Source: Styela clava
Lineage: Eukaryota
Direction of reading: 5' to 3'
Assembly (NCBI RefSeq): GCF_964204865.1
Contig: NC_135254.1
Span: 10,230,001-10,294,000, forward strand
Length of the DNA stretch: 64,000 nt
Under the pieces are notes generated by a model that made no database searches, had not been told where the DNA came from, and saw only the letters and a program-made list of their open reading frames with translations. Shown here piece by piece: positions 1 through 61,500 of this stretch. Positions within the stretch are counted from its first letter, which is position 1. Each line of letters opens with the position of its first letter. A program made the position numbers and the translations under genes.

Positions 1-56
1 GGCAGACACTAAGTTTAAAAACACATCTTTATCAAAATTGAATTATTTGAATTCAG

Positions 57-15000: not shown

Positions 15001-15094
15001 AAGCTTTGGATATAGATGTGGGTCAAAATTTCCGGGATATTACACAAATGTTGCAAGATACATTCCTTGGATTAAATCAAAAACTGAAGCATAA
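57..15094 (+). CDS. Bf: Complement factor B/C2-like gene A, 5'-truncated by the window edge (vWA C-terminal part + trypsin-like serine protease, 520 aa visible)
   Basis: Eleven exons with GT-AG introns join in frame: 57-201, 421-564, 864-937, 1310-1469, 1828-1973, 5784-5913, 7103-7236, 7531-7723, 9448-9592, 12617-12764, 14951-15094 (TAA). vWA motifs SGTATAYAL and IFLFTDG. Protease motifs ECGQ, AWPWQ, LTAAHV, HDIAL, RPICLPCT...C..EEELL (Bf/C2-type insertion), [25 protein letters not shown]. Exon-for-exon paralogue of gene B. Confidence 0.92.
2540..2922. repeat. Dispersed repeat copy, inverted partner of 5257-5650
   Basis: About 370 bp matches the reverse complement of 5257-5625 along its length (e.g. 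GGATGCAAGCATGAAACTTGGCACACATGTACAGTAGCATC; GACCAAACACGATTATTAGTCGCACAACCTGAAC). It ends in the CTTGGTGCACATACTCCTGGAG terminus, which resembles those of the MITEs at 45031 and 61054. Confidence 0.8.
3435..3757 (-). mobile_element. tRNA-derived SINE
   Basis: Minus strand has a tRNA-like head with pol III B-box GGTTCGAATCCC (3696-3685), a GC-richer body and an (ATCCT)n tail. A related, internally deleted copy lies at 59340-59527. Confidence 0.75.
5257..5650. repeat. Dispersed repeat copy, inverted partner of 2540-2922
   Basis: Reverse-complement match to 2540-2908 within the same intron of gene A. Confidence 0.8.
6180..6860. repeat. Foldback-like element with degenerate CACGTGTCC-type minisatellite arms in inverted orientation
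   Basis: 6180-6350 has short units such as TCTCACTTGTACCACATGTTCC and TCTCACGTGTCCCAC. 6760-6858 has the complementary GGTGAGACACGTGGAACAAGTGTGAC units. Confidence 0.5.
7967..9441 (+). mobile_element. Helentron/DINE-1-like non-autonomous element (family H1) with a nested copy (8028-8264) and an internal ~360-bp tandem repeat
   Basis: Family termini are 5' TTATTG(G/A)ACACGT.GTGGACATA and 3' GTGT(C/T)CATATATTTGAGCAT.GCTCTCTTGTT: subterminal inverted GGACACGT/ACGTGTCC, a 3' GAGC..GCTC hairpin and a T-rich end. It has a (TTG)n microsatellite and is homologous to 43028-43468 and 17116-18352. Confidence 0.7.
8602..9373. repeat. Tandem repeat, units of about 357-368 bp, about 2.1 copies
   Basis: C(C/T)GTGTTTTTGTCTGTTTGATTGCTGTGATG..GCTTTGTTTATA recurs at 8602, 8959 and 9327, and the intervening sequence is near-identical. 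Confidence 0.9.
10191..12560. mobile_element. Non-autonomous DNA transposon with ~335-bp terminal inverted repeats
   Basis: 10191-10524 (TAGACCTTATTCATTAAAAACCCATCCTACGCGCAAAAAG...) is the reverse complement of 12228-12560 (...CTTTTTGCGCGTAGGATGGGTTTTTAATGAATAAGGTCTA). No transposase ORF was seen. Confidence 0.85.
10734..11129. mobile_element. hAT-like MITE nested in the long-TIR element
   Basis: TIRs CAGGGCTGGATTTA ... TAAATCCAGCCCTG; the target-site duplication is only partial (GTGA..). Confidence 0.7.
13462..13535. mobile_element. Tc1/mariner-type mini-MITE
   Basis: TAGGGTGACCCAAAAACGGAA ... TTCCGTTTTTTTTGGGTCACCCTG, flanked by TA on both sides. Confidence 0.7.
13567..13890. mobile_element. 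hAT-type MITE
   Basis: Imperfect TIRs TAGCGTTACCATA ... TATGGTGAGCTTA with a perfect 8-bp TSD CCGATAGG (13559-13566 and 13891-13898). Confidence 0.8.
14625..14810. mobile_element. Mutator-like MITE
   Basis: TIRs GGTTCCATTACATTTGAACCCA ... TGGGTTCAAATGTACGGTCACC with a perfect 9-bp TSD CGGTAGTAC (14616-14624 and 14811-14819) and an internal TAACCCTAACCC motif. Confidence 0.75.
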
Positions 15095-15434
15095 TGTTTT
15101 TATGATATGACAAGGTTTGAATTGCATTTTACTTAATCAAGAAGAATTTGTTTAGTTCTTTCTTTTAAAATTGGTGCGTATTCAATGAATTCCAAAAAGA
15201 AATTCATATTGATTCCAACAGTAACACTTCGCTTTGTTCCTGCCTGGCTCTTCTTTGGTATCGTTGATTCAATGTTATGATTTCTATATATAATTGTTAT
15301 CCAATTTCAACCGGTAGTTACTGACTTCTTTTTTACATGACAAAATCTATATTCATATGTAGTGTGTCAGTGTAAACTTTTTGACTCTTCTATTTAATTC
15401 GTTTTTCGCAAGATTAAATGAAAAACACAAACAC

Positions 15435-21583: not shown

Positions 21584-24500
21584 ATGTTAACAATATGTTT
21601 AAGCCTACTCTGCGTTTTCCTGTTTATTGAACACGGTAAGTGAAGTTTTATTTGCATTATTCCATGTCATTGCGTTATGTAAGAGCCGTTCTTTGTGACC
21701 TGGACGTCACCGATTGCACAGTAGCATTTATTAACAGTTCAATAACGAGGTCTTTTTAAACCCGAAGTTAGTATCCTCACAATCACACAACTTGAGGTAT
21801 ACAGTTGACACGGTTATCGTGATACAAACATAAACAAAATCAGCACAAATTATTAATATTAATTACATCGACTCGTGAAGCGTATTCGAATTTATGGGCA
21901 CAATGTATTTTACCTAATATTGTAAAAATAAATATGTAATTAATACAATAGTATACCAAAATCCTCGAATGCAATTAATCACCAAGTCTAACCAGTTTAC
22001 CACTAAGTAACTTGTAACCTTGAATACAGAAAGAGATACAAATTATAACATTCCGAATTTGTCCGCTATTCCAGGCTTGAGATATCCGTAGTCGATCATA
22101 AAACCGTCAAAGAAATCTAATCAAAACAATCAATTAACTGTGAAATTATTCACAAAGATAGGCTAATTCAAACTAAGGTCCATTTAGAGCAGGGGTCACC
22201 AACCCATTGCCCGCGGGCACCAAGTCGCTAGTCTGTTTAAAACGACTCAAATAACGGTGCTTATCAGTAAGCTACATCTATTAATTTTATTCTTGTAATT
22301 CTTGTTTAAACCTTGTATAAGAAAAGGAAATGACAATATATTAATAAGTGACCTCGGTAATGTCACGTGTCGTTCCAATTATGACATCACACACACAAGG
22401 TCAGCTGGATCTATGCGTGTCATCCATTTCTAACCATTTTTGATGGAACTTGGACATGTTAAGCATTGTTGAGCAACGTTCAGCCCTAATGCGGGACAGA
22501 TGGAGCTTAAAATTGTAACACTGCTAAATGACCTCCACCTCAAAGCCAATCAGACCTGTCACATTTTAGGGCTCTAGTTTACACAGAAAGTGCCGTGGTG
22601 TATGAACAGCAGCTTCGATGGTCACAAGCTTGTTTGGTTCAACCTATCTTTGTAAATCAGACTTTTATTATATGAACTTCATCAAGAACAAACACTGAAC
22701 ACACCTCACCAATGAACATATGCAAGACTCACTTAGATTTTCGGTGTCAGGTTGCGAACCAGATAAAACACAATATCAGGTTTCCCAAGTAGCCTACTGA
22801 GGAGGAATACACCAAATTTGGTCTTGGTTGGAAATATGACATTCATTATTTGTCAAATGTGTTGGTAAAATATAACATTCAATAGCACAACTAATGTTGA
22901 TAGTTTCATGACTAATTAACATTATGAGTGTCCCCTTGGCTAAATCCCATTAATATCAAATTGGCGTTTCAGAATATTGCTCTTAGCTTAGTCTGTACTC
23001 AGAAAGTAGCCCGCTTCTTTATAAAGGTTGGTGACTCCTGATTTAGAGTAACTCGAATCAACGTATTCAATCGTGCCTAGTGTCAAACGGATCTTTATGT
23101 CAAAACAGTAAGCAACGACTGGACAGGCAATCGCTTTCGAAGTCTCCTCAATTATTTCATAATGAAGTGAAATTTGAAAATATGAAGTGAAGTGTGAAAT
23201 TCGCGGTCACACTTTTTATCATTGAACATCAATCATTTCACTCTAATAAACCTTATTTATCCAATGGCTACCTTAGCTTATATTGTTTCCGCCAATTCAT
23301 TTTCGAGTTGAATTACAATGGAAAATTTTGCGGAACATGCTGTGAGTAGTATTACTAACAATGCTCAAGAATCACCAATTTTTGAAAAAAATGAGGGTGA
23401 CTGCCTATATAAAACTATAAAGTTATAAACCATATATTGGAATATATTGGAAAAAGTAGAATTAGGTATCAAAGATCTAAAAAGTGTATTCAGATAAATC
23501 TTCATAGTCGTTAGCAACAGCTAATTTTTTCTGAAACCAAATATACCCATAGTTTTTATTTATCATCGTATCAATATTTTATCGGTGGAAGAATTATTTC
23601 CAAACTATTCCACAAAATCATCTTCTCTCTCAATAATATTGCAAAAAAAATTTAGTTCACTGCTCGTTATCAAACCTTGATTAAGTCCTTGATTACTTGA
23701 TTAAGTCTATATTATTAAGCCATGTCATCGGCTTACCTGTCCGCTGGGTTAAAATTCGAATCCTGTCCCTTTACTCTGTCGCAGCCAAATTGACTATAAA
23801 GTGTTATAGTCACTTTGGTCGCAACGTATCAATAACGTACCGTTATTCTACTCTGCCAAACAAAGCGCAGTTCTGCGAACGAATCAGATGTGCGTGGAGT
23901 CGTAATTTTTGAAAACCAAATTTTGGTTAAAGACCTTGCGTACATCATGTCAGGGGATACTGAAAGATTCAGTCTAAAGGGAATTATAGTTAATCGTTAT
24001 AATTTTTTTACTCCACATCGATATATAACATATTTTATGTCTTTTCGTGCAACCGTTTAATTCATACAGTGCATTTCATCTTTTATGAATTTGGTCACTG
24101 ATTTAAATAACAAAAAAGATGCTCGTAACCAGGATGTTATGTTTTTTTTATTTTAAATACTTATGATGGATATTTGGTATTTTTTGTTTTTTAAAAATGT
24201 CCTTTTTTTTTCAAAATATTTATTTTGAAATGTTTTGGTGTTTCATTAACTTTTTAAGCTATTAACCTGAATCAACAAGCGTTTTAGGTGTCGCTGCCTG
24301 AAGACCCCTTGAGGTCCCTCGCGACTCCTGTCACACAATTTAAGTTAGTTTCCACTTGTATTTGTAATTATTTTTTTTATATATCATACCATGTTTAAAT
24401 TGTGTTGACGAATAAATGATGATTGATTGAAACCCCTAATCCAACATTCTTACCCATGAAAATAAACTACTTTTAACGCAGGAAGATGCCAAGCATCAAT

Positions 24501-27500
24501 GTGTGATACTGAAGGACGATTTACGTGTGAGGACGGCGTTTGTATATCAAGAGCCAGGGTATGCAATGGAGTAAGTGACTGTCGTCGTGGTGAAGATGAA
24601 TCGAATTGTGGTAAATTATTTCACGAAATCAATAGAAATTGATTCAGAATCGTAATAGTGAATCCAGTGTGCTAATTTTAGAATATAATTCTCTTTAAAA
24701 GAACTAATAATTTGCCACAAAAGATCATCCCAGTTTATTAGTGTTACCCAGAAATTTCACTTCAATTAAACACTTTAATCACCTCGTTCACGCGTTTAGT
24801 CCCGTTTCTAGCGCTCTTCAAGTGCGTTGTATTACGTGCAGTCTTTTCTTGTTTGGTTGTGTCAGGAGTATTTTGTTTTTTACGTTCAAGAGTTGTATAA
24901 TATTTGTCCTTACAGGCGCAGCGCTTGATTATTTTACCACCATATTTTATTTTCTAGATATAGTAAGGTCCATCTGCTATAGAAATTACGATTGGTGGTT
25001 TTCAAACGGATATCATTGCAAGAAAGATTGTTCATCGACTTGGAGATGCAAAGGTCTACTGAAACAATGTATATGCGATGATGAGTGTGGATTAAGTTGC
25101 ATCAATCCTAGTAAGATATTCCATTAATTTTCAAAATAAAAAATAATGACTAACAATCATAACTACTATATATATTCAGCAAAAAAAAAGCAAACGATTC
25201 ACTAAAGCTCATAATACTAATCCAAGTTACCAATTTATTAGTGCAAATTGCGCAAAGGAAGAGTCTTTGAAAAACTTCTGTTCTTTAATTCAAGAACACG
25301 ATTCGTGATTGTGGGATGAAAAAGAGTTTTGTAACAAATTTGTGGATGCCTCGTGGGTGCTTGGTATTTAAGGGCATCATCACATTGCGTCAAGTAAAAG
25401 CTATGAATAAAATGTTGAGTAAATATGTTGTTCATAATATGGTTTTTAATGTAGTTATTATTGAGTAGACATGTTCCAAAAAGTCTGCGAATGCCGTTTG
25501 ATATAGGCGTAGGAGAAACGATAATGTCATATGATTTTCCATCAGTTATTATTGTATTGTATTGCTATATTTGTGACGCAAGTAGCATCATCATTTGTTG
25601 TGATGAAGTATGCCACATCTGACTAGAAATTTGTAGTAAATCAACCAATTTAGACATACATTCATCAGAGAATTTGAATATTGAAATATCAGAACAAAAT
25701 TGGGAAAATATAATTACTCCATGAAGCGACAAAGCAATCATGATAGCGTAACAGATAATATAAAAGTAACAAAAAACACATGAATCTTTAAATGAGGCCC
25801 CAGGTTTCCGATTTTTACCCATAAATAGTAGCACATTACAATACGTTATATATCAGTGGCAGCCCGCATCTGCCCTTATTTGGGACCAAAGAGGCCTGCG
25901 AGTATTAAAAATATTGAAAAATGTGAGTTAGTAGTTCCTAAAGTGCACATGTCATACTTTGTTATAGGTTCAATATGTGAAGATGATCCACCCACTGTTG
26001 AGCACGGTGGGTACTGGAACATCAGACGTACAATTTGGAGTGGTGGATTAAAACACTTAGAGATTGTCGATCCAGTCGAACCTCCTTACTACTTGTGGGA
26101 CATGGTAACTTACAAATGTGAACCTGGACGACGTTTAGTTGGTCCGCTACCGAGATGCAGTGGGCATCGACGTTGGACCAATGAACTTCCGGTGTGCGTA
26201 GGTACATATAAAATATACACTATAATGCAGCTATGGCATAATGAAAAGTAAAACGGTTAAAGGTGTTGTCTCTTATTTATTGGAATTTGCACATTTTTGC
26301 GGAAGATTTTTCATCACTCATTTACAACCAGAGGGTAATAATGCATGACTTAACAACATGGACATCTGGCTAACTCGTTCACTTCTCTCCATGGCCGTTC
26401 TTAGAAAAATTTATGCGCCCATTGTCCATTACATTTGTATTATTATTTTTTCACTGTGGCAAGTTTACGAGATTGTCATACAGTGAAACATACATCGTTA
26501 GCCTATATCTTAACCTACGTGTAGTGGTACTCCGAAGTGCATCTGAAATAAATTATGAACAGAGAAAAAACACAGAATTATAATAGATTTCCGAACTATC
26601 GATATTCTTGATTTTTGAGAATAATGAAAATCAAATTTCAACTTATAGTTCGACATCAATCGTACAAAAATTGCAAGAATTAAAAGTAAAAATAAATTAT
26701 TGGAAATCGTACAACTATGTTTTCATTACCTGCGTTTTTCTTTTATCAGATGAGTCATGTCGGGATCCTGTCCCAAGTGTGAACAATTCAATATACTATC
26801 GATATTTGAGACCATCTGAAGGGACAGTGCTGCCAGTTTCAAATAAGTTAATTCCTCTTATCAATGACGTAGTTGAATACAAATGTGAGGAAGGATTATT
26901 GCTCACAGGAGAACCTCCAAAATGTCTTAAAAATAACACGTGGTCAACTCACACTGCACGATGTGCTGGTATGAATTTTAAGTTCATCTGATGTGATATT
27001 TTCCAACACTTGTGTTTAAATCTGGTTATAATAATTTTAACGTATGGATAAGGAAAATTGAAATTTTTATACAAAAATATTCATCTACGTACTGATTTAT
27101 ATTAAAAAATTGTCTATACAAAAGTAAAACCATAAAAAACTGCAGGGTTTGATACCTTTGGACTAATTTGTAGTGTTTTTATTAGTTCAATGTTGAGTTT
27201 CTGCAATGATTAACTTGATGCTCTGTGGAACGTTCTGCGTTCAATCACGTTATATAAATTATTGAACTTTTCCAGTTCCATGCTTTGAGGGAGTTGACCA
27301 TAATTTGATATCAAAATATGGTTTGACATGTGGAAGTAGTTGTCTTGCTACCGCAGATTGTGACTCGGGAATGGAATGCTTTTGCGACGGACCTTGTTCC
27401 CGAGTTTGTGTTGACCCAAGTGAGTAATATTTATATCACTTCTATCAGGGACTTTTTATGGCACTCGGTTTTATGATATTATGTTATTTATCATAAAATG

Positions 27501-30500
27501 CAAAGTAGCATCTAGTTCTCGTATAACCCCTAAAACAGGCTGCAGATGCACTTCCAAAAAAGACAGGCGTTGCGAGAAATGAACAGATCAATTTCATTGT
27601 TATGTCATAAATGATGCCAGGCCCAATATCTGAATAACTGTACACAGCGGTGCATACATGCGTACAAAATTAGAGTTTTTGAAAATTACCATACCGGCCC
27701 GAAAATCAACATTTTGAATATGAGCGATCGCAGCCCGCCCTGACTGTCCAACTGACGGTACATTATAATAATTTAGTTATTGTTAGATTAATTTAAGGCC
27801 GGTTTTATCAATTTTTATCACTGATATGTTAGCATTTTAGCCTCCGCGTGGCGGGTCACAAATAAAACGCGGTGGGTCACTTTGTGACCCGCGGATCAGT
27901 GGTTCGCCATCCCTGCTATATAGTATAGTACTACAGTATATCTTATTTAATAAGTAATCACCAAAAGTCTTCTAAATTATACGGAATCGAATTCCCTAAA
28001 ATGGCCTTTATCTGCCAACATACATTCAGTCGACGGGCTATCTAATTCTTCGATATAGAACACAATTTATTTTTTTGTAAAAAGAAGTCGGATGCGATAA
28101 TAAAGCTTTTTCAAAATTTTTTCTTGATTTCATATTTTTCAATTGGGTCATCAACTTCTGGCGACCTTTGAACTAGAAAAAAAGAAAGTAGACTGAGCGC
28201 TTCATAGATAATTATTTTAAAATAATTCTAGACATGATTACTATACCGTACAAGTATTTTAGAATATTTTCTAATTTCTACTACGATTTTTATTCTAAGT
28301 TGTATACGAATTGACAAGTCACAGTTGTTTAATGTGTACAAAAATAACTATGCTACTTCTTCGTATACTTAAATAACTTTTCAGATATTGAGTGTGGCGA
28401 GGCATCCTTTGTAGAATATGCCAGCATTAATTATACTGGATCGTCAATACGTAAAGTTGCCAGGTATTCTTGTGATTACGGCTATTACATGGCATATGGA
28501 TCTCCTTCTCTTTACTGTTCCGGATCAGGATTATGGATTGGAAATGAGCCTATTTGCATGCGTATGTATAGTTACAACGTTCATTCTATCAAATGACAAT
28601 ATAAAAAACATAAAAAGTAATCTAATAAAAAATATAAAATTATTTGTTAATAAATTCGAGCGCGATTCATTTTTTTGATGAATCTATGTTATTCCCGTTA
28701 CAGGAAACTTACCCTTATGATAGATAATTCATCTTTAATGCACAGTTATTATTTTACAATCATTCAAATATATATTTAGAAGTTTTAAAATGCTCCCAAA
28801 GTCGAATTATTTTCATATTTAAGCTGTACAATGTGGTGATCCTAGTACGAGTATACAGGAGACCAGGGGATCAATCAGATATTACGGTGGAACAGATGTT
28901 GGTTCAGTAATGAAATTCCGATGTCATGGAAATGATAAAATGCTTGGAGCAGAACATAGAACTTGTTTAGGAAATGGTAAATGGAGTGGACCACTGACAA
29001 TTTGTGATACACGAGGTAAAGAAAAAATTGTATGCAGTATTCATTCAAAAAGGCCAGGGTCGCGACTTGTTACAAAACATGATATACACTGTAAACAAAC
29101 ATAAATACATGTAAATGTAATCGAATCATTTACATTGTTACTAACTTTAAATGTAGCTATGTACTTGAAGGCCATTTAATTGAGTATAAATAAATTAAAT
29201 ATTGCAGATAAAGAACTTCGGTGCCCTCATCCCGGAGTTCCAATAAACGGTAGACTTATAGGAGATGATTTTTCAATCGACTCCACAGTCAGATTCGGCT
29301 GTGATCGCGGTTATGTTTTATACGGAGATCAAGAACAAACATGTTTATGGATAAAAGAATGGTCTGGAGCTGGCATAGCTCCTACCTGCGTCGGTAACAT
29401 TTATTATGTTGATACACCCTGCACGTCTGCTTAGCAAATGTCATATCTATTGCAACTCATGCATATTCATATTATTTTAACGAAAAATATCTAAGTTTGA
29501 AAGGCTAGTTCAGGATGGCTGATCAAATCTGTGTCATAATAATAATCTTATGTAACAAAAGAAATACTGTGTTTCATTTTCATTCACGAATCTCAAAGGG
29601 TAATTTTTATAGCAGAATTTTTTCCATTTTGGTTTCATCATTATAGATCCTCGGTATCCACATACTGCCGACGACGTGATGGGATCTTTGACAAGATCGT
29701 TAGCCAATCTTCCTGATCAACAAACAAGTCTTGGGCGATCTATCAGCGACGATATAACTGAAGGACAAGAAATTTACCTCGTGTTCGATGTTTCAGAAAG
29801 CGTCTTGAGCCGAACGAAAGATTTCGAATATCAAATGGAATTTGCAAAACGACTTGTTAAACGAGTAAATCAGATTTGGGTTGAAATAAATTCTAATCTA
29901 AATTATATTAACAAAATTTAGCATTTTCAGTGTATTTCGATCTAAAACTAAGAAAATAACTCTGAGTCATTGTAATCAGTAATGTGGCTTTTCATGTACA
30001 TTTTCATTATATTTATTGTGATTCTATTTTCATCACATTTGCTTTGATTTTCAATTCAGATGGACGGATTCAAAGGAAATATAATGTTTGGAATAATGGT
30101 TTTTGCCTCATCAAATGTCACGGTACTCGATATTACTAAAATGGGAAATGAACGGAGGAATACAACATACATATTAGAAACACTAGACAAACTCTACGCA
30201 GAAGGTACTTATATCAATATATGGAAATATCGATATCAGTAGATTGGGTTTTTTTAAAAATTTCGATTTATATATATATTTATAGTTTTTGAATAGATCT
30301 GGGCCTAAGGCATTAAATTTGCTACAAAATTTTTAACCTGGCTTTTTCTTTCTACAAATGTGGAATCTGAAATGTTAAAAAAAGTTCTCAATTTTTAAAA
30401 ACCAATATTTTTACTTTTCAGCCACCAACAACAAATACAAAGAAAGAACAAAATCTGGAACAGCAACTGCCCATGCGCTATCAAAACTCAGAGGTGTTAT

Positions 30501-33500
30501 GTCATTTATGAGACAGGACAAAGAAAATGCTAATAATAAAAGACATTGTTTTATTTTTACCGACGGTAATGCAGTATGTTGAATCAATATTAATTTAATG
30601 ATTTTTTGTATCAGTAAAAATACAGTTGGAAAAATAATCATTAAATAAATTTTCAATGAAAACATACCCATGGTATTTTTGTATTTTGCAGGTAAACATA
30701 CGGAAGGAACTGATCCCGTTGAATTACGAAATAACATAGAATCTGAATTCCAACCGAATATTGAGGTATCATTAAGGTCTACAGCAGTAGTCGGCAAATT
30801 TCATGTACTACTGGGCAAATGTACAAACCGACGGCAGAGAGCGAACCGCAATAATTCCCACTTATAAATAAATGCTGCAATAAACTTCAAGTTATGACGC
30901 AACCGTCACATCCTTTTCTGTGGTATTAGAATTAACAGTAAGCACGTTCTGCAAGTAAACGTCATACAACCGATGTGCTTTTGCTCAAGTTAATTACTAA
31001 AAAACAAACGCCGTTAAACAGCCGTGATTAGGAACACACATACACACAAGTTTTCTTAAATTATATTGAAACCTAATCAGATTTAACAACAAACTACTCA
31101 CTTAAAACCTACTCTTTGTTGGAATTACAATTCAAGAGGTGGTTTGAGTATCTATGTGTTAACATCTGATATGTTCGAAGTGATTTTTCGTTAGATAAAC
31201 GTTTTTCTCTTTCGATTAATAGAAATCCTAGCTTCGAAACGGTGTCTTATTTCGTTTTTTCCAGTTTTACAGCATAACAGCATGTCATGATTGTAATGAT
31301 GTTAACAGTCAAACAGAATTAGTTGGACTCTCGTCAAAAAATGGAGACAACTATATTTATATAAAAGATTACTATCAACTTTCAAGTTATCTTGATAAAG
31401 TCACGGATGTAAAATTGGGTAAAAATTAATTTATTATTTTTCCAGTTAATTTCAGATTAGTCAGTCAGTCAGTTCATTTAAAAAAAAAAATGTTATCAAC
31501 AGGAGGTCCGTACAGTACATGTTTCTGGCACGATTTAAATTTTACAGAGGTTACTAATAAGTTTTTTGGATTTAATTGTAATAGTAGTGCTTTAACATAA
31601 GTTCATTTGACTTTTTTTTTTTAAATATTGGCCAATATTATATTCCGGATGCCGGGGTATCTCTAATTATCTTGCTTTGATATAATTCAGGTAACGCGGC
31701 TAATTATTTGTTTGAAAATTATAATTTCACAGATTTTGCAAAATGTGGCCAAGCTGGCAACGTTAAAAGCATAAAGCAACAAGCTAGTTTAGCAAGATCA
31801 ATAGGCAGTGAACAGGCGGCCGAAAATGCCTGGCCCTGGCAAGCTTTGATTACTAAAAAATTACGAACACAGGAGAAGGTGAGATAAGAATTGTACTGGA
31901 AGATATTGTGCATATGTATTTAATTAGCAATTAACAAACGCCATTGCGTAGTCACCTGTATAAATGTTGAAATAAAGATAACAATAAAACAAGGGGTCGT
32001 GGTTATGCAAAGATAATGAATATCATGATTAATCCATGAATTTCTCTTCTATCAAAAATATGCACGCATGCAAGTTTTAACACGCGCATAAAAGTTGTGA
32101 TTAAGATTTTGCGTTCGGCTAACCAATTCACGTCTGTGATTGGTGTCTCTGAACCTTTGGGTTATCAAGGTTAAGGCTTTAGTTTGAAATTCGCTTGTAA
32201 AATTTAAATTGATATTAATATTCTAACTTTCTGCAAGATCTCTTAATCGGTTGATACTATTTCTTTTTATTTACTTTTATTTATTAAGACATTGCAGAAA
32301 GGAATGTTGGGCGGAGGTTCAATTTTGAATGGAAACTGGATACTAACGGCAGCCCACTTACTTGGTATGCAATCGCATATCCATAATTGGTTGGAGGCTT
32401 ATGTGATATCTGTTGGTAAGATATTCAAACCTGTAACCTAACTCATGTGAATTGTACCTTGTTGCTTAGATCGGAAACCTAAATATTTGAATGTCAGATT
32501 TATCATTTATTTTATTTAATGCTGGTCGCCTACCGCTACTCCTGTATTGTGATTTGTATTGCTAAGGTATTTCACTTTGATGCAAAAATCTCAGAAAAAA
32601 CGAGTAATTTCAGATTATAACATCGAATTAAAATAGCCAATAGAAACTGATTCAAATTGTTTCAGGATTATATTTAAAATATTTTAGTGTACAATTACTT
32701 TTCATTTCTTCTGCCTAAATCTCCTGAAACAACTAGAAAATTGGCTTGTGTTTTTCATTTAATCTTAATGCATTTCATTTTATATATATGCATTTTTTGC
32801 GATGTAGTATATCAGTAGATTATATACATATAGAAATATTATTAAAACTAAACGTGTGGACAAAATGCCGAACAAATTTAATCAATCTATGAATCAATTC
32901 GTCATAGCTACCTAAATAAATGCTAAGTAAACAAGCGGGCAATGCACCGATAGATAATCCTGTCACAATCAATTGTTTAGCATTCAGTCGTTATAATTAT
33001 TCAACACTAAATCCACGTGGTGTAAGTATCACACCAATTCAACATTTAAAATAGATTAGAATAGTAGCCCAAGTAAAATCGATTCTTTCTCAAATAAACC
33101 AACAGCAGCAATGATTTAGCAAAACGAAATGTATTTTTGTTATTGGATTCCAATGTCCAGTAATGAAATTCTCACAATTTCAAAAAATGGCGCTGATTTT
33201 GGTGCAACAGGTTGACACGTGGTAACACGAAAATTCATTTGAAAAGGTTTTCAGCAATAACAACGTCTTCTATACTCGATTTTATATCGATCCAAAAGCG
33301 ATTCTTATCCACGTAAAATATCAAAAAAGATCAGTTAGGTTTAAACTCATTTTTTGTCTATAAACCTATACATAATTATACAATATATATCATTCAGGTA
33401 TATTCAATCGACTGACTGATGGAATGCATAGAATTAAATCTACTATCAAAATGTATGGAATTGCCGAGTACATTCCCCACGAAGGATATGTTGGCGGGGA

Positions 33501-36500
33501 AAATTTTGAACACGACATCGCTTTAGTAAGAGATCGCTTGGTGTTATGAAGACTATAAATTATGTGTTCAGTTATCAATGAACCATTAAAGTAATAAGTA
33601 ATGGCACTACTTTTTTGAGATTCATAAAAAGTGTTTAGAAAAAAACGTGGTCCGTTAACTCGGAATATGTCGAAATCTAGTATAAAGTCGACTTGATGAT
33701 GTCTCGAGAAAATCGTAGATAAAAATTTCATGAATGGGAGTAGTCTCAATAAAAATTTCTATAAGTTAAAATAGTTCACTTTCCAGATGAAAATCGGATT
33801 CGAGTTTAATTCAAAAATGGAGCCCACAGGTGTCAATCAGTTAACATTTGGATACTATATTCGTCCCATATGTCTCCCTTGCACTGGAACATGCTTGAAA
33901 AAAGAACAATTGGTCGATGACAATGGAGTACCATTGATAAACGATGAAATGAGCGCAGAACAGAAATGTTTGAAAGAAGGTTTCACTTTTTTTGGGGGGG
34001 GATTATTTAATTATCAATGCGCCGAGTAAATCAATCCTTTTTGGCTTAGTGTTGTAATAAAATGAATATTTAAGTCAACGGTGCGAGTTTTGTAAAAATT
34101 GAACTACATAAAACATTACCGTTATCATAATCTGTATTATTTGATTGATACAATATTAATATAATTTATTTTTTAAATCACTGCCAATCAAAATTGAGAT
34201 TTTAAATTGCTAGTTAGAAATTTGAATCTGGTAAAAAGAATTTGATCGTTGTTTGGATAACTGTTCATGTAATATGTATAATAGAGGAACTACTACATGA
34301 TAATAACGCAAAAGTTGTCGCAACCGGATTTGGAAATATGAAACAGAGTGATACTTCAATAAAAGAGGAAGACTTGAACTTATCACAAAAACTACTACAA
34401 GCTTTGCTACAGATACAAAATAGAAGCATGTTAGTAATACCTTTTTTAAATGAATGTGTTATTCAACGTCCGAGCGATCAAAGGTTTGTACTTACGTCAA
34501 CGAAATTGTGTGCATTGTCTCGGTGAGGATGTCATGGTTTTGAGTGTTTGTCACGGTTTTCAATAACTAATATAACTAGAATTCGGTTGGAAACCGATGA
34601 CTTATCGATCGAAGGTTAGGGGATCCCCCAAAACAGTGGTCTTACTCTATAGTGACACCGTGTGTCCCATCACTAATTAAAAAATAACTCACTAATCATA
34701 CGACATAATCCATCCAAAATCAATAGGCTTCTGATCCGAGCTAAGATGAATGCACATGCAAAATTTGGAGCAGATTGAACCTCGCTTTCGTGAGATATCG
34801 CGTGCATCTAACACACAGACATATAGACAGACAAATAACTATCAACATACTTACCGATCAAGATCGATAAGTAACAATGGGGACCATAAAAGCCAACATT
34901 GTGAGTCATTCCTGTAGACTCATAGCACAGCAGGTATCTAAAAAAAATCAATCTTATGTAGTACCCTAGTACGCATATTATAATAAACTCGATTTACATA
35001 AATTCTATCCACTTCACTTCCCGTAAAACATAATTTACAATTCTTATCACCGCATCTACAGCATCACTATGCATTATATATCGCTGGACTTCAAAACTGG
35101 AGTTCGTCATTCACCAGATCGTTTTGGATGATTTGCTCACTTTGTACAAATGACCCCTTTGAATAAGGATTCCTGCAATATATTAGTGCTTTATATGTTT
35201 CTCGATTAATGCGGAAGATTGTAGAAACCAAAGCGCTCTGATTTAATGGGGTATTTTGATATTGTACATTTTGTGCAAAGTTTTGATGTTTTAGGTTAAT
35301 TAATTATTTCAAAGTTTGAGGTTCAAATTATTATCTCAATTAGGATTTCTTTTTTAACGTTGTATTTCATTCAGTACGAGAGAAACATTAAAACTTGATT
35401 TTGTATTATTTCAAGCTAAACTGAAAAATTGTTTTCGGAATAGACGTTTTCTGGATTTTTCTCGAGTAGACCTGAAACAATTGGTACACCCTTTCCGTTC
35501 AACAAAATGTTATGTCGCAGTGTTACGGATATTGTAAGCCTAATATCCACTCCTCAAGCGCAAAAAAGACGACTATAGATTGAAATTTTTTATCAGAGAC
35601 TAAACGATAAAATTTATTGTTTGTGGAGGAGACCTAATTGTTTGGTCATTCTTCTCGCATCTGATAAATGATTTATGATAAACAAACAAAAACATTTAAA
35701 AATTATTATTTAATATGGTCAGAAAAATGTCGACAATACTCTAAACGAATTCATTTCGATATTTTAAATTGTACAAAACGTCCGATCAAATATTCAGCTA
35801 TCATGGACTGTTTTTGTATTGTATCTTCTTATAACAGACAATAAAATAAAAGATTTGAAAAGCGTCTAATTTTAACTTGATTTTAACTTGAGTTTTTGCA
35901 TAATGAAAAGGGGTTCTGCAGACCTCAATCATTTTGCATATATTTCAGATGTGAAGAGATGGGAGAAGAGATGCGGAGAAAGGTAAATTCAACCACCTAC
36001 AATCTAGACAAAATGTTTTGCTGCAAGTCTGGAAACAGAAATAGAAAAACTGATGCTTGCCAGGGAGATAGCGGCGGACCTGTTGTGCGAGAGGTAGGCA
36101 AGTTATTTTCATAATAGGCTACACTGGGTATTCAAATATTGTTGGCAATGAAGTCACATCTATGACAGAGATACAACAATATTCAGATAACAATGTTCAG
36201 TTGTATGCGCGGCGATGGAAATTGAAACGCGTATGTGTAAGTTTTTAGATTTTAGACATTTGTCATAAGTAACAAAACGCTTTCGCGAGAAATCATAACC
36301 TAATAAAATGAGCTTAATCATCAGCAAAACACCAAAGGGCAGGATAACAATATTTCTCGTGGACTGGAAAAAATACTACGCGGACCCAACCGTTGATCTA
36401 TATTCTATATAATCACTAGTGAAGGTCTATGTCAAATTTCACAAGGTCATTTCTCCTCTGATTCAACGCTACAACTTTCCGGAAATATCGTTGATTAATG

Positions 36501-37178
36501 ATAATAAACCAGTAAAACTAAAAGTGATCCTAATGTTGAAAAAGCTGATGTATCCTTATTTTCGTCACGGTTTACCGAAAACTCATTTAAGACTTGGCAT
36601 TATAAAAAACGATCAAGGAAACAAATCATAAATTACCCGGCTTTTAAGTAGAAACATAGATAAGGACCAAATAAAATTGTTCCTGGGGTCAGTTTCGAAG
36701 TGCTGACGACGCGGAAGAGAAACTTAAACACAATAGATTGGGTTATAACAATTATGTTACAACAATTAAGTGTACAAATAATTTTTAAAAAGGTTGTTGT
36801 TATTGCTGTTGAGTAGTCTGATGTTGTCGTAAGTTAAAAATATCGCTTTTTGTATCCAACGGGCGAATCGATTTCAAACTTTTATTACCTAAACATGATA
36901 ATACCTAAAAGATGAAGAATTACCAGAAGGCCCATCTTTTTTTTCATATTTCTTCTGAATAAACCAAGTTTTGATGTTTCTGATATTTCACTACTAAACC
37001 ATTCACAGTACCAAATGTTCATATTGCATTCCAGGTAAAAAATGTTAAAACCGGAACTTCATGTTGGGTTCAGATAGGCATAGTAAGCTTTGGATATGGA
37101 TGCGGGTCAAAGTATCCGGGATATTACACAAATGTTGCAAGATACATTCCTTGGATTCAGACAAATATTGGAGTTTAG
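21584..37178 (+). CDS. Bf: Complement factor B/C2-like gene B (signal-LDLa-WAP-CCP-CCP-WAP-CCP-CCP-CCP-vWA-serine protease, about 1082 aa)
   Basis: Twenty-one exons join in frame (3249 nt): 21584-21635 (signal MLTICLSLLCVFLFIEHG), 24482-24610 (LDLa), 24958-25110 (WAP-like), 25968-26201 and 26750-26968 (CCP), 27276-27419 (WAP-like), 28385-28561, 28824-29015, 29208-29393 (CCP), 29647-29864 (linker SLGR-SI, MIDAS DVSES), 30060-30204, 30422-30565, 30692-30765, 31265-31418 (vWA), 31733-31878, 32289-32415 (TAAHL), 33398-33525 (HDIAL), 33787-33979, 34285-34429, 35949-36093 (DACQGDSGGP), 37035-37178 (TAG). The first exon is the least certain. Confidence 0.92.
22190..23040 (+). mobile_element. Deleted hAT element with transposase remnant
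   Basis: TIRs CAGGGGTCACCAACC ... GGTTGGTGACTCCTG, perfect 8-bp TSD ATTTAGAG, and an internal SLFGSTYLCKSDFYYMNFIKNKH*THLTNEHMQDSLR dimerisation-domain relic. Confidence 0.85.
34574..34874. mobile_element. Helentron/DINE-1-like element (family H2)
   Basis: GACTTATCGATCGAAGGTTAGGGG near the start, ACAG microsatellite, and terminal hairpin TACTTACCGATCAAGATCGATAAGTA; homologous to 61934-62526. Confidence 0.65.
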
Positions 37179-58500: not shown

Positions 58501-61500
58501 CCATCTTTGATATAGCTGGTACTGGATCTTGACATGTTACACCTATAAACATCTTATTTTTAGTCCCTTTACCAAATCTCCTTATACTGAATTGTCTACT
58601 CACAATATCGCAATGTTATTTCTCGATGTTTAAGATGAATTTATCTTGCTGTGTATATGCAGAATTAAGCAAAGCTGGCGACTCCATATCACAGAAAGTG
58701 CTACGAAAAAATTTAATCTTTCATTTTTGACAAAATTACATACACGATGGAAACGAACAAAACTCACGCTTGCATTGTATCAGTTTTCCTCCCCATTTTC
58801 CACTCCCTGTGCACTTTCTAGAAACATCCCCCGCTGCAGTATATGTTCCCTCGTTACAAATATAATGAGCCACGCGTTCAAATCCTTCCCCGGTGTATTC
58901 GATGAATGAGTTTTCAGCAGGTGGTGCATCACCACATTCTATCTCTGTTGAATAGTTTAAAAAAATACCTTAAACAATTGCCTAAAAGTATATTAGTACC
59001 AATTGACAAGACAAAATTTAAAAATATATTTTGTGATATATTTGGATTCACATAGTACCGCCCGCGTGTAACGCGGTCAAATAATAGAAGCATCTATTAA
59101 AAAATATAACTCACTCAAGTCGACGCATGTTCTTCCACAGGGGTCGTCACACTGGCAAGTTTTCCCTGCAGCACAATCTCCATCTGTTATACAATCTAAA
59201 CCGCACGATAACTCGTATTCTTTGATCTTGTCTTCTTCTTTCATAGGACAAGATCCTGTTTAGTATATAATTTAAATTAGTGCGAGTTGATTTGAATTCA
59301 TGTTCAAATACGTTAAATGAATATTTAAATCAAGAAGATGCACGGTGTGACGCATCGTGCTGAGCGTTAGTAATACGCTTGCACAGCCTGGGAAAATTAC
59401 GTGCGGAAAGATTACTAGACTCTTCGTATTGTTCACGTGACCAATGGATTGGCAATTGGGCGAGAGGCCGTGATTCGTCATATGACTAAGCCGTCTTGCC
59501 GGCTTTCCCAACCATGGGATAAATATCGGAAGCTCATAGTAGCAGAAGCGTTGGAGTTCTATTTTACAAAGTTATCCCAACGCTGTCGCATGGTTGTTTT
59601 CGTGTATTATCAATTTCGTCTTATCGGGGGCAAAGCAAAAATAGACAAATAATTAATTTCAAGTCGATTTCAAAAAAATACTGTATTATGGTATAAATTC
59701 AGGTCAGGAAATTAGTACATCAGATACCTAAGCTTGTTCAAAAACTATATCTCAAAAATATGAACCGACAACAAAGTTCAATGTATTTTTGATCAAATCA
59801 AAATAACAATATCAAATAGGAGCTGCAACAATAATAATAACATGTACCTACTTGTGCATAAAATCTCTTTTGTCCACGTTTTATTTTCCCCTCTCGCTCT
59901 TCCGTGACAAAATCTAACATTACTAGGAACCGCGAGATACCCCGGTTCGCAGGTATGATAAGCCCGGACATCGTATTTATATGGTCCTACTGCATCTTCG
60001 AGCTTGTTTGTGTGGCGACTTCGACGCACATACCGGATATGACGTAGATTTGGAATCATTTCAAGTGGAGGACATGTTCTTACTGAATATAAATATTGAA
60101 CACGAATAGGGATCAAGTTAGTGCAAAGGGAAAGAAAATGGACATTTTTTATTTATGTAATCAAACGTATACAAAACAAATAATTCGAATAATTTTGAAT
60201 TTTGCAAAAAAGTAAACAAGTAGAGTGTTTATATTAAATATAGCATACGACTTAATGGCAGGAAAATAGCTTTGCAAAAGACAAAAATTTCCTTCATATT
60301 CAAATAATTTAAATACGTACAAATGGCAACGCAAGACATTCCACATTCATGATCGCAAACACATTTCTTCTTCTCAATTTTGGAGCAATCTTGTCCTTTT
60401 TTACATTTCTTTTTACAATCTTTATTGATTCTGCATTTTTTTCGACATGCTGGTCTTCCAACAAGTGCCGCTTTTTCCAAGTTAGCTTTACATTTCTTCG
60501 GACCTAATTAGAAGTGAATTTAATATATAATAAATAAATGACACTTCGTGTGACGCTTACGATCTGTTGATTCATTTTATTCGGCCAACAAGGCCAAGCG
60601 AAGAAATTTCTAATTTTTAATGTCCTCAGCATACCATTAAGTTCACGAGATTAACCATCATATACATCAAATGAATAACTGAATGACAATAGAAATTGCT
60701 TCAGGCTAGCGATTTTTCAAACCTAAGTTCAAACTATATGCATTATATTAGCCGGATATTATTATTGCAAAAACTCATTAGCTTTCAGTAGTTGAAAACT
60801 TAAAATTAAAACACACAATTATTAGTTGATAATAGTGGTTCAAATTGAATACCCGTAAATCAAAATTATAAAAAATTAAAGTCTCATTTAAAAAAAAAAA
60901 AATGAAACCCAAGCAAAAATAAACTAAGGTGAAATAGTTGGTTTCAATCGGAGAGTTTGCAAGAAGAAAAGAACTCTTGTTTTGTACCAAACTCGGCAAT
61001 CATACGATTAAATATGTTTCCGTAAAGCCATATAAAATACACATTAAGAGGTACTCCTGAGGTATGCGTACCAAGATGTCGCATAACCTGAACCTTAATC
61101 TGGTACACAACCTGAGTTCAGGTTGTGCGCTATCTTGGTGGGCATACTTCAGGAGGTCCCATTAAGGAATAGACATATTGATTCGATTGTGCTAACAGCC
61201 CGATCATAGTTCTGTTTATCTCATGTAGCCTTTTCAACATGATCCACGTTACTTGTGTAACTATTTGATGATATGAATAAAATATTATTACTTTCTGATT
61301 GATGATCGACATGAACAGGCAGTTTTTATATGTTTTAGTATCTTGCTAATACAATACACCATTCGTTGTAAATCTTACATTTTGCAAATTCATAACTTTC
61401 ATCTTCGTCGTGCAGGCAATCACTATAATCGTCACACATGTAATCCCTGCTGATGCAAACTTGACCACTTTCTTTGTGACAATGAAATTTACCAATGGCT

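What the first reader, a model, noticed from the sequence alone, without database searches (positions are those of the whole stretch)
24482..29393. Factor B with two WAP-like four-disulfide modules interleaved among LDLa and CCP domains
Seen: exons 24958-25110 (C..CKKDCSSTWRC..QCICDDECGLSC) and 27276-27419 (C..CGSSCLATADC..ECFCDGPCSRVC) each carry 8 Cys with WAP-like spacing of the CxCD..C..C variant. Both splice in phase into a Bf gene, and gene C has the same two modules. Established: vertebrate Bf/C2 have only three CCPs before the vWA; WAP domains occur in protease inhibitors and antimicrobials (elafin, SLPI, crustins); WAP+CCP occurs in nematode LEV-9. From memory, Ciona Bfs were described with extra LDLa/CCP modules, and I do not recall WAP modules in any Bf. 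Inference: the cleavable Ba-like arm may carry a built-in inhibitor, an antimicrobial module or a pattern-recognition module, giving a C3-convertase subunit with its own sensor or regulator.
Basis: partly seen in the sequence, partly recalled or inferred. Interest (0 to 1): 0.82.

Follow-up and report, generated by a model that had tools for sequence, protein, structure and literature searches.

The report
WAP-type modules in sea-squirt factor B
A sea-squirt (Styela clava) complement factor B gene really carries two expressed WAP-type cysteine-knot modules, but they are the LEV-9/Hasp kind that always precedes a sushi domain, every ascidian factor B examined has them, and nothing here shows they inhibit proteases or kill microbes.

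Summary
Exons 24958-25110 and 27276-27419 each encode an 8-Cys module. RNA contigs from three studies splice them in frame into a factor-B gene, which matches the Styela clava database protein P0169.

- **Family:** they are divergent WAP domains. Pfam WAP is the only family hit (18.0 and 19.3 bits, cutoff 20.8). A profile of the window's four modules finds WAP proteins among 1.84 billion sequences, and 86 of 91 hits share the C-x-C-[DN]-x2-C-x3-C variant.
- **Subtype:** this variant belongs to LEV-9-like WAP-then-sushi proteins. In every factor B examined, each module is followed at once by a CCP.
- **Not peculiar to this gene:** genes A, B and C, Halocynthia roretzi Bf (sequence AAK00631.1), Ciona intestinalis Bf-1/2/3, C. 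savignyi, Phallusia and Clavelina all have the modules. The two positions group separately across species, so both probably predate the ascidian orders.
- **Literature:** no paper I could read names WAP in any Bf.
- **Function:** both modules sit in the cleavable Ba-like arm. W1 is under purifying selection. An inhibitor, antimicrobial or sensor role is unsupported.
- **Fold:** the searches were inconclusive.

Verdict: a real, overlooked domain assignment in a known protein family. Moderate interest.

The parts
21584..21635 (+). Gene B exon 1: start codon and 17-residue signal peptide (MLTICLSLLCVFLFIEH), ending in phase 1
   Evidence: The 81-letter loose end of RNA contig X1 at 24481 maps to 21605-21634. 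It matches the N-terminus of P0169.
24482..24610 (+). LDL-receptor class A exon, the only LDLa of gene B
   Evidence: Pfam PF00057 38 bits; joint 24609/10>24957/8 in three RNA runs.
24958..25110 (+). W1: LEV-9-type WAP module, 8 Cys, net charge +1, phase 1-1 exon
   Evidence: Pfam WAP 18.0 bits and the only family hit. RNA joints on both sides. dN/dS 0.20 against gene A.
25968..26201 (+). CCP exon directly after W1
   Evidence: Pfam Sushi 24.9 bits; RNA joints.
26750..26968 (+). Second extra CCP exon
   Evidence: Pfam Sushi 21.1 bits; RNA joints.
27276..27419 (+). W2: LEV-9-type WAP module, 8 Cys, net acidic, phase 1-1 exon
   Evidence: Pfam WAP 19.3 bits and the only family hit. The 5' joint 26967/8>27275/6 appears in three RNA runs. 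Contiguous in P0169 residues 263-311. AF2 pLDDT 89.
28385..28561 (+). CCP exon directly after W2, first of the three CCPs that correspond to vertebrate Ba
   Evidence: Pfam Sushi 32.6 bits; joint 28561>28824.
28824..29015 (+). CCP exon
   Evidence: Pfam Sushi 33.7 bits; RNA joints.
29208..29393 (+). CCP exon, the last before the linker and vWA; the next exon starts at 29647
   Evidence: Pfam Sushi 31.3 bits. The loose end at 29393 maps to 29647.
29647..37175 (+). Rest of gene B: linker with the conserved ...SLGR/SIS... site, vWA domain with DVSES, and serine-protease domain with GDSGGP
   Evidence: tblastn of P0169 gives 92-100% identity. Pfam VWA and Trypsin hit P0169. Sequence read.
60321..60503 (-). 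Gene C W1: the same module with an internal C-x3-C-x5-C duplication, 10 Cys, net charge +13
   Evidence: Pfam WAP scores only 8.1 bits. 100% identical to P0185 residues 110-169.
59115..59255 (-). Gene C W2: 8 Cys, net charge -6
   Evidence: Pfam WAP 20.2 bits. Matches P0185 residues 246-293.

Best explanation
Gene B is an expressed Styela clava paralog of ascidian complement factor B. Its domain order is signal peptide, LDLa, [WAP-CCP-CCP], [WAP-CCP-CCP-CCP], a linker with a conserved Arg site, vWA, and serine protease.

What the two 8-Cys modules are. They are divergent WAP domains of the LEV-9-like subtype. This subtype has one residue between Cys5 and Cys6 (motif C-x-C-D-x2-C-G-x-S-C) and always sits directly in front of a CCP.

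How they got there. This step is inferred. They entered factor B as phase-1 WAP-CCP exon cassettes before the ascidian orders split, and they have been kept since.

What they do. Both lie in the N-terminal Ba-like arm. If the conserved ...GR/S... site is the activation cleavage, as in vertebrate factor B, this arm leaves the protease on activation. That step is also inferred. The most likely role is as small disulfide-locked binding or spacer modules. They would lengthen and diversify the docking arm, with a basic W1 and an acidic W2. A canonical protease inhibitor role is less likely.
For: Identity of the gene:
- P0169 ('complement factor B-like', Styela clava) matches gene B at 92-100% and includes both modules.
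- Pfam finds LDLa, 5 Sushi, VWA and Trypsin in it.

Expression:
- Spliced RNA contigs come from three studies.

WAP homology:
- PF00095 is the only or top family for all four window modules, at 18.0, 19.3, 20.2 and 8.1 bits.
- Orthologous modules pass the 20.8-bit cutoff in Clavelina Bf (33.4 and 26.0 bits) and in C. intestinalis Bf-3 (20.9 bits).
- A PDB profile search puts elafin first, at E 0.03.
- A profile of the four modules gives 91 hits at E<=1e-3 in 1.84 billion proteins.
- Of 68 small hits, 61 match Pfam WAP and 13 also match Sushi.

Subtype:
- 86 of 91 hits carry C-x-C-[DN]-x2-C-x3-C.
- Source names include lev-9-like and Hikaru genki.
- LEV-9 and Hasp are described as one WAP domain plus CCP domains; in Hasp the WAP precedes them (PMC9083331).

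Architecture:
- Every W is followed at once by a CCP in Styela, Halocynthia, Phallusia, Ciona and Clavelina Bf.

Age:
- W2 modules of all species group together (support 84/87) and W1 modules fall in the other half of the tree.

Constraint:
- W1 dN/dS is 0.20 at dS 1.1, like the neighbouring LDLa and CCP exons.

Charge pattern:
- W1 runs from +1 to +13 and W2 from -7 to +1.
Against: - None of the window's four modules reaches the Pfam gathering score.
- Pfam reports no WAP at all on the full-length Styela and Halocynthia proteins.
- The adjacent CC that I recall as part of the canonical WAP signature is absent.
- Fold searches do not discriminate. Foldseek gives nothing at E<=1e-3. The best VIA Z is 2.5, and WAP structures tie with knottins.
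- Disulfide pairing could not be read.
- hhalign against canonical WAP repeats gives only P 1e-3 and probability 9%.
- The function statement is inference only. No binding partner is known.
- The LEV-9 WAP domain is dispensable for that protein's known role.
Confidence: 0.72

Rival explanations
1. The modules are working protease inhibitors, as in elafin, SLPI or waprins. They would hold the zymogen's own protease domain or its activating protease in check, or block microbial proteases, until the Ba-like arm is cut off.
For: They belong to the WAP superfamily. Their place in a cleavable pro-arm would suit an intramolecular regulator.
Against: - The C1-C2 segment, where elafin and SLPI carry the inhibitory loop, varies freely among orthologs.
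- AF2 predicts a helix there, at residues 8-14.
- The nearest relatives are LEV-9-like matrix proteins with no inhibitor activity reported in the review I read.
- The LEV-9 WAP domain is dispensable for that protein's known function.
Confidence: 0.1
2. W1 is a cationic surface-binding or antimicrobial module. It would steer factor B to anionic microbial or tunic surfaces, giving the convertase subunit its own targeting device.
For: W1 is net basic in every ascidian Bf examined, from +1 to +13. Gene C's W1 carries +13 and has a duplicated Lys-rich Cys motif.
Against: - In genes A and B the charge is only +1 to +2.
- W2 is acidic.
- LEV-9-type WAPs in general are Lys-rich in the same loop, so the charge may be a family trait and not an adaptation.
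- No assay exists.
Confidence: 0.13
3. The modules are not WAP at all. They would be an unrelated 8-Cys knot, for example knottin-like or colipase/Dkk-like, that merely shares Cys spacing.
For: Structure searches rank Dkk and knottin toxins level with WAP structures. The scores of the window's own modules are below the Pfam threshold.
Against: - Pfam offers no competing family.
- The profile built only from these modules retrieves canonical CC-type WAP repeats at E 3e-17 (P0005). P0057, which the alignment shows to be a canonical WAP, comes back at E 2.4e-4.
- 61 of 68 small hits are Pfam WAP.
- All eight Cys align with elafin's apart from a one-residue gap at the CC.
Confidence: 0.05

Closest known systems
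LEV-9 (C. elegans) and Hasp (Drosophila): secreted proteins with a WAP domain and CCP domains
   Same: The proteins that sources name lev-9-like or Hikaru genki carry the same WAP variant, C-x-C-D-x2-C-G-x-S-C, with a Lys-rich loop and a CP-R-D/N start. In Hasp the WAP comes directly before the CCPs. These are the best non-tunicate matches of the module profile (PMC9083331).
   Different: LEV-9 and Hasp are synaptic-cleft scaffold proteins with no vWA or protease domain and a single WAP. Here two to four WAP-CCP cassettes sit in front of a factor-B vWA-protease unit. I did not have the C. elegans or Drosophila sequences themselves.
Ascidian complement factor B: Halocynthia roretzi Bf AAK00631.1 and Ciona intestinalis Bf-1/2/3 (Q5H875, Q5H874)
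   Same: Same family and same module order. H. roretzi Bf has exactly the gene A/B architecture. Ciona Bf has W-CCP-W-CCP-CCP-CCP-vWA-SP.
   Different: - The one readable summary (PMC4714745) lists only CCPs and, for H. roretzi, LDL_A. It does not mention WAP.
- Gene B is a Styela paralog with one LDLa, gene C has two, and Ciona has none.
Canonical WAP four-disulfide-core inhibitors and antimicrobials: elafin, SLPI, omwaprin, nawaprin
   Same: Eight Cys in the same order. Elafin is the best PDB sequence match. These structures appear among the few VIA matches and are the only rows that span the whole model.
   Different: - One residue separates Cys5 and Cys6, where the canonical form has an adjacent CC.
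- The inhibitory-loop region is not conserved.
- The modules are embedded in a large mosaic protein.
- No activity is known.
Vertebrate factor B / C2
   Same: Three CCPs, a linker with an Arg cleavage site, vWA with a MIDAS motif, and a serine protease with GDSGGP.
   Different: Vertebrate proteins have nothing in front of the three CCPs. This is textbook knowledge. The profile search gave no W hit in any non-tunicate protein that had vWA plus protease.

Membership tests
WAP four-disulfide core (Pfam PF00095) | Profile score at or above the curated gathering threshold (20.8 bits) | tested here: not met
   The window modules score 18.0, 19.3, 20.2 and 8.1 bits. Orthologous modules do pass: Clavelina Bf 33.4 and 26.0 bits, C. 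intestinalis Bf-3 20.9 bits.
WAP four-disulfide core (Pfam PF00095) | Eight conserved Cys in the WAP order | tested here: met
   Three modules have 8 Cys and gene C's W1 has 10. All 8 align with elafin and with canonical WAP repeats.
WAP four-disulfide core (Pfam PF00095) | Adjacent Cys5-Cys6 (the CC of the classical signature, recalled from memory) | tested here: not met
   All modules have C-x-C. The same variant is found in 86 of 91 profile hits, and 61 of the 68 small hits match Pfam WAP.
WAP four-disulfide core (Pfam PF00095) | WAP fold with C1-C6, C2-C7, C3-C5, C4-C8 disulfides | tested here: inconclusive
   The AF2 model has pLDDT 89, with a beta-hairpin at the C5/C6 and C8 strands. Foldseek gives nothing at E<=1e-3. 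In the VIA search, WAP structures score Z 2.1-2.4 and tie with knottins. Disulfide pairing could not be read from the tool output.
LEV-9/Hasp-type WAP-CCP cassette | C-x-C-[DN]-x2-C-G-x-S/T-C variant, directly followed by a CCP domain | tested here: met
   The motif is in all four window modules, although B-W2 has S-R-V in place of G-x-S. A CCP exon follows each one. The same arrangement is seen in non-tunicate hits.
Complement factor B / C2 family | CCPs, then vWA with a DxSxS MIDAS motif, then a trypsin-like protease domain | tested here: met
   Pfam on P0169 finds Sushi x5, VWA at 50.8 bits and Trypsin at 112 bits. DVSES and GDSGGP are present. C3 binding and convertase activity cannot be tested with these tools.

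The most novel reading that the evidence does not exclude
The WAP modules are functional regulators built into the zymogen arm. One version has the basic W1 as a polyanion- or microbe-binding targeting device. Another has a W module masking the protease or vWA site until the arm is cleaved. Either way, ascidian factor B would carry its own sensor or brake, a design not known in any complement convertase.
Probability: 0.12. Interest if true: 0.7.

Novelty: new variant of a known kind. Interest (0 to 1): 0.4.

Why it matters
It corrects the domain map of a textbook example of exon shuffling in complement evolution. The extra N-terminal modules of ascidian factor B are not only LDLa and CCP. They also include two ancient LEV-9-type WAP domains that travel as WAP-CCP cassettes.

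This links the complement-type CCP proteins of tunicates to the WAP-CCP matrix proteins of protostomes. It also gives a defined pair of modules, basic W1 and acidic W2, to test for a role in C3 docking or surface targeting.

The same cassette is used at least 46 times in the Styela genome, 18 of them within about 253 kb around this window. It is therefore a main building block of the expanded complement-like gene set.

The proteins are already public, and one Clavelina entry already carries an automatic WAP label. The gain is interpretive, not a new kind of system.

Tried and rejected
Searches that gave little:
- Foldseek against PDB: no hit at E<=1e-3.
- VIA-align wide search: best Z 2.5, with WAP and knottin rows tied. 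Inconclusive, and not evidence against WAP.
- ESM Atlas: W1's nearest named clusters are WAP, but at 0.76, which is only a lead. W2 gave no usable hit.
- hhalign of 19 ascidian modules against canonical WAP repeats: P 1e-3, probability 9%. Weak.

Literature:
No open paper combines WAP with factor B in tunicates.
- Yoshizaki 2005 and Nonaka & Kimura 2006 are not held, so I could not read how the original authors labelled these regions. I also could not read Ji 2000, which I know only from a reference list.
- From memory only, and not verified: the Ciona paper described 'two LDLR domains and one SCR' in front of the usual set. Ciona Bf has no Pfam LDLa, even at E<=1, and its order is W-CCP-W. 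If my memory is right, those 'LDLR' domains would be these W modules.

Other points:
- A second LDLa exon upstream in gene B was looked for and rejected. The RNA joins the signal-peptide exon (ends 21635) straight to 24482.
- The high-depth 92-base RNA contig inside W2 (27308-27399) is not a separate small RNA. Genes A and B are identical there except at 27347, so the assembler collapsed them.
Exons were searched one by one by reference, and the public model P0169 stood in for the spliced product.
Full report
**What is in the window.** The window is AT-rich eukaryotic DNA (GC 0.31-0.38) with three factor-B-like genes.
- Gene A is on the + strand. Only its vWA-protease half is inside the window (about 50-15100).
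- Gene B is on the + strand (21584 to about 37175).
- Gene C is on the - strand (about 62800-49550).
- Database proteins fix the organism as Styela clava. P0001 (XP_039270387.2) matches gene A at 92-100%. P0169 ('complement factor B-like', 1065 aa) matches gene B at 92-100%. P0185 matches gene C at 91-100%.
- The window is G000:C5:10230001-10294000.

**The observation.**
- In the frame that starts two bases in, exon 24958-25110 reads IVRSICYRNYDWWFSNGYHCKKDCSSTWRCKGLLKQCICDDECGLSCINP.
- Exon 27276-27419 reads PCFEGVDHNLISKYGLTCGSSCLATADCDSGMECFCDGPCSRVCVDP.
- Each has 8 Cys.
- Gene C has the counterparts at 60321-60503 (10 Cys, from an internal C-x3-C-x5-C duplication) and at 59115-59255 (8 Cys).
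- Seven Cys columns plus the Asp after Cys6 are invariant across modules that are otherwise 32-43% identical.

**Expression and splicing.**
- Runs X1, X3 and X6 come from three studies. They hold only about a fifth of the words of the 5.1-kb stretch, which fits its exon fraction.
- Their contigs skip every intron with GT..AG ends: 24609>24957, 25110>25968, 26199>26748, 26967>27275, 28561>28824 and 29013>29206. None of these joints is in DNA run X10.
- W1 is therefore bridged on both sides and W2 on its 5' side. The W2-to-CCP joint was not among the rows printed. P0169 is contiguous across it.
- A loose end of the X1 contig places exon 1 at 21584-21635. It encodes the signal peptide MLTICLSLLCVFLFIEH and joins directly to the LDLa exon.
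- All module exons are phase 1-1.
Exons were searched singly by reference, and P0169 served as the spliced product.

**What the modules are.**
- Pfam WAP (PF00095) is the only hit for the two gene B modules and for gene C's W1, and the top hit for gene C's W2. Scores are 18.0 and 19.3 bits for B-W1 and B-W2, and 20.2 and 8.1 bits for C-W2 and C-W1. The cutoff is 20.8.
- A profile of the four modules puts elafin first in the PDB at E 0.03. It aligns every Cys except for a one-residue gap at elafin's CC.
- The same profile, run against 1.84 billion representatives, gave 91 proteins at E<=1e-3. The top ones are ascidian factor-B-like proteins.
- Most of the remaining hits are small proteins. Of 68 scanned, 61 match Pfam WAP and 13 also match Sushi.
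- Canonical CC-type WAP repeats are recovered too. P0005, a fish papilin-like protein with 29 matched stretches, scores E 3e-17. P0057, a canonical WAP by the alignment, scores E 2.4e-4.
- So the modules are homologous to WAP domains.
- 86 of the 91 hits carry C-x-C-[DN]-x2-C-x3-C in place of CC. Sources name such proteins lev-9-like (Priapulus), Hikaru genki (Bursaphelenchus), SVEP1-like, or beta-2-glycoprotein-1-like in turtles.
- In the large non-tunicate hits the WAP sits at the N-terminus and a Sushi domain follows within a few residues.
- LEV-9 is described as one WAP domain plus eight CCPs, and Hasp as one WAP followed by up to 17 CCPs (PMC9083331).
- The window's modules therefore belong to this LEV-9-like WAP subtype.

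**Structure.**
- AF2 on B-W2 with a 46-row alignment gave pLDDT 89. It predicts a short helix at residues 8-14 and a hairpin at 33-36 and 42-45.
- Foldseek found nothing at E<=1e-3.
- The VIA wide search gave only ten rows with Z>=2. Four are WAP structures (SLPI, elafin, omwaprin, nawaprin). These tie with knottins, and three of the four (SLPI, elafin, nawaprin) are the only rows that span the whole model.
- This is compatible with WAP but not decisive.
- The Atlas and hhalign gave only weak support.

**Distribution.** I built HMMs from the window's own exons and mapped the architectures.
- Styela A, B and a chromosome-16 paralog, and Halocynthia roretzi Bf (AAK00631.1): LDLa-W-CCP-CCP-W-CCP-CCP-CCP-vWA-SP.
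- Styela C: LDLa-LDLa-W-CCP-W-CCP3.
- Phallusia: LDLa-W-CCP-W-CCP3.
- Ciona intestinalis Bf-1/2/3 and C. savignyi: W-CCP-W-CCP3. They have no LDLa, even at Pfam E<=1.
- Clavelina P0174: four W-CCP units plus two CCPs.
- Every W is followed at once by a CCP.
- Pfam on the full-length Styela and Halocynthia proteins does not report WAP. This explains how the domain has gone unnoticed.
- One Clavelina entry already carries PF00095 in its precomputed annotation.
- None of the non-tunicate hits that I scanned, or that carried a source name, combines W with vWA and a protease. Absence elsewhere is not proven.
- A maximum-likelihood tree of 40 modules (48 columns, weak resolution) groups the W2 modules of all ascidian Bf proteins together (84/87). 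It places the W1 modules in the other half. This fits the best reciprocal matches between genes B and C. Both positions are older than the split of the ascidian orders.

**Constraint.**
- Between genes A and B, W1 has dN/dS 0.20 at dS 1.1. This is like LDLa (0.18) and CCP1 (0.17).
- W2 has dS of only 0.13, against 0.35-1.3 in its neighbours. A 92-base core differs at a single site.
- I read this as local gene conversion. Its dN/dS of 0.47 rests on ten differences.

**How it probably works.**
- The linker after the last CCP carries a conserved Arg (...SLGR/SIS... in Styela A and B, and similar in Halocynthia and Phallusia). It is followed by a vWA domain with DVSES.
- By analogy with vertebrate factor B, cleavage there would release an arm of roughly 500 residues that contains both W modules. 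This is inference.
- W1 is basic in all species (+1 to +13). W2 is acidic or neutral (-7 to +1).
- The C1-C2 segment is where elafin and SLPI hold their inhibitory loop. Here it is variable and partly helical. The LEV-9 WAP domain is dispensable for receptor clustering.
- I therefore favour a docking or spacer role for the modules in the pro-arm. I put inhibitor and antimicrobial or targeting roles at about 0.1 each.

**Comparison and novelty.**
- The proteins are known. H. roretzi Bf and CiBf-1/2/3 have been public for years, and the Styela models are in RefSeq.
- The one readable summary of Bf architectures lists only CCP and LDL_A for ascidians (PMC4714745). The Styela genome paper counts 17 factor B genes without giving domain detail (PMC7540406).
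- No open paper pairs WAP with factor B. I could not read the original descriptions.
- This is an overlooked domain assignment and an ancient WAP-CCP cassette in a known family. It is a variant architecture of factor B and not a new kind of system.
- Another report of this scan (s1-815922) describes a CCP-WAP-CCP unit in a different Styela protease gene. The genome holds at least 46 W exons, 18 of them within about 253 kb around this window.

Noticed in passing
window 27437-27990 (intron after W2): A very high-copy repeat. Depth in DNA run X10 rises from about 500 to about 400,000, and many contigs break or join here. The sequence holds an inverted repeat around 27860-27900 and looks like a MITE-type element. 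It is also abundant in the RNA runs.
   Followed up: no
window 27308-27399 versus L001:8383-8474 (gene A W2 exon): Genes A and B differ at one base in 92 in the core of the W2 exon. Flanking exon ends and introns are diverged. dS is 0.13 against 0.35-1.3 in neighbouring exons. This looks like a local gene-conversion tract.
   Followed up: partly
window 42658-42575, 42242-42090, 41477-41406 (- strand): The 'spare' catalytic-serine and terminal exons downstream of gene C match residues 457-534 and 624-647 of the Styela protein P0010 at 78-93%. P0010's first half is CCP-WAP-CCP-protease. These exons therefore look like part of a separate protease gene of that type, not leftover exons of gene C.
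   Followed up: partly
G000:C5:10.22-10.48 Mb and elsewhere in the genome: At least 46 W-type exons in the Styela assembly. Eighteen lie within about 253 kb around the window. Further groups are on C5 (11.7-11.8, 13.07, 14.1-14.2, 18.8 and 20.2-20.5 Mb), C16 (3.75-3.79 Mb), C13, C9, C1 and C6.
   Followed up: partly
window 60321-60503 (- strand), gene C W1: This module has 10 Cys from a tandem C-x3-C-x5-C duplication and a net charge of +13. It scores only 8.1 bits against Pfam WAP. The RefSeq model P0185 contains it unchanged.
   Followed up: partly
P0179, P0180, P0182 (Ciona intestinalis Bf-1/2/3): The Ciona factor B proteins have no LDLa domain by Pfam, even at E<=1. Their mature N-terminus starts with W1. 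Styela, Halocynthia and Phallusia Bf have one or two LDLa domains. The number of LDLa domains varies among ascidians, while the two W modules are constant.
   Followed up: yes
window 27308-27399, run X1: A 92-base RNA contig over the W2 core has depth 737, against about 23 for the rest of gene B. It probably pools transcripts of gene A, which may be expressed far more strongly than gene B in that sample.
   Followed up: no
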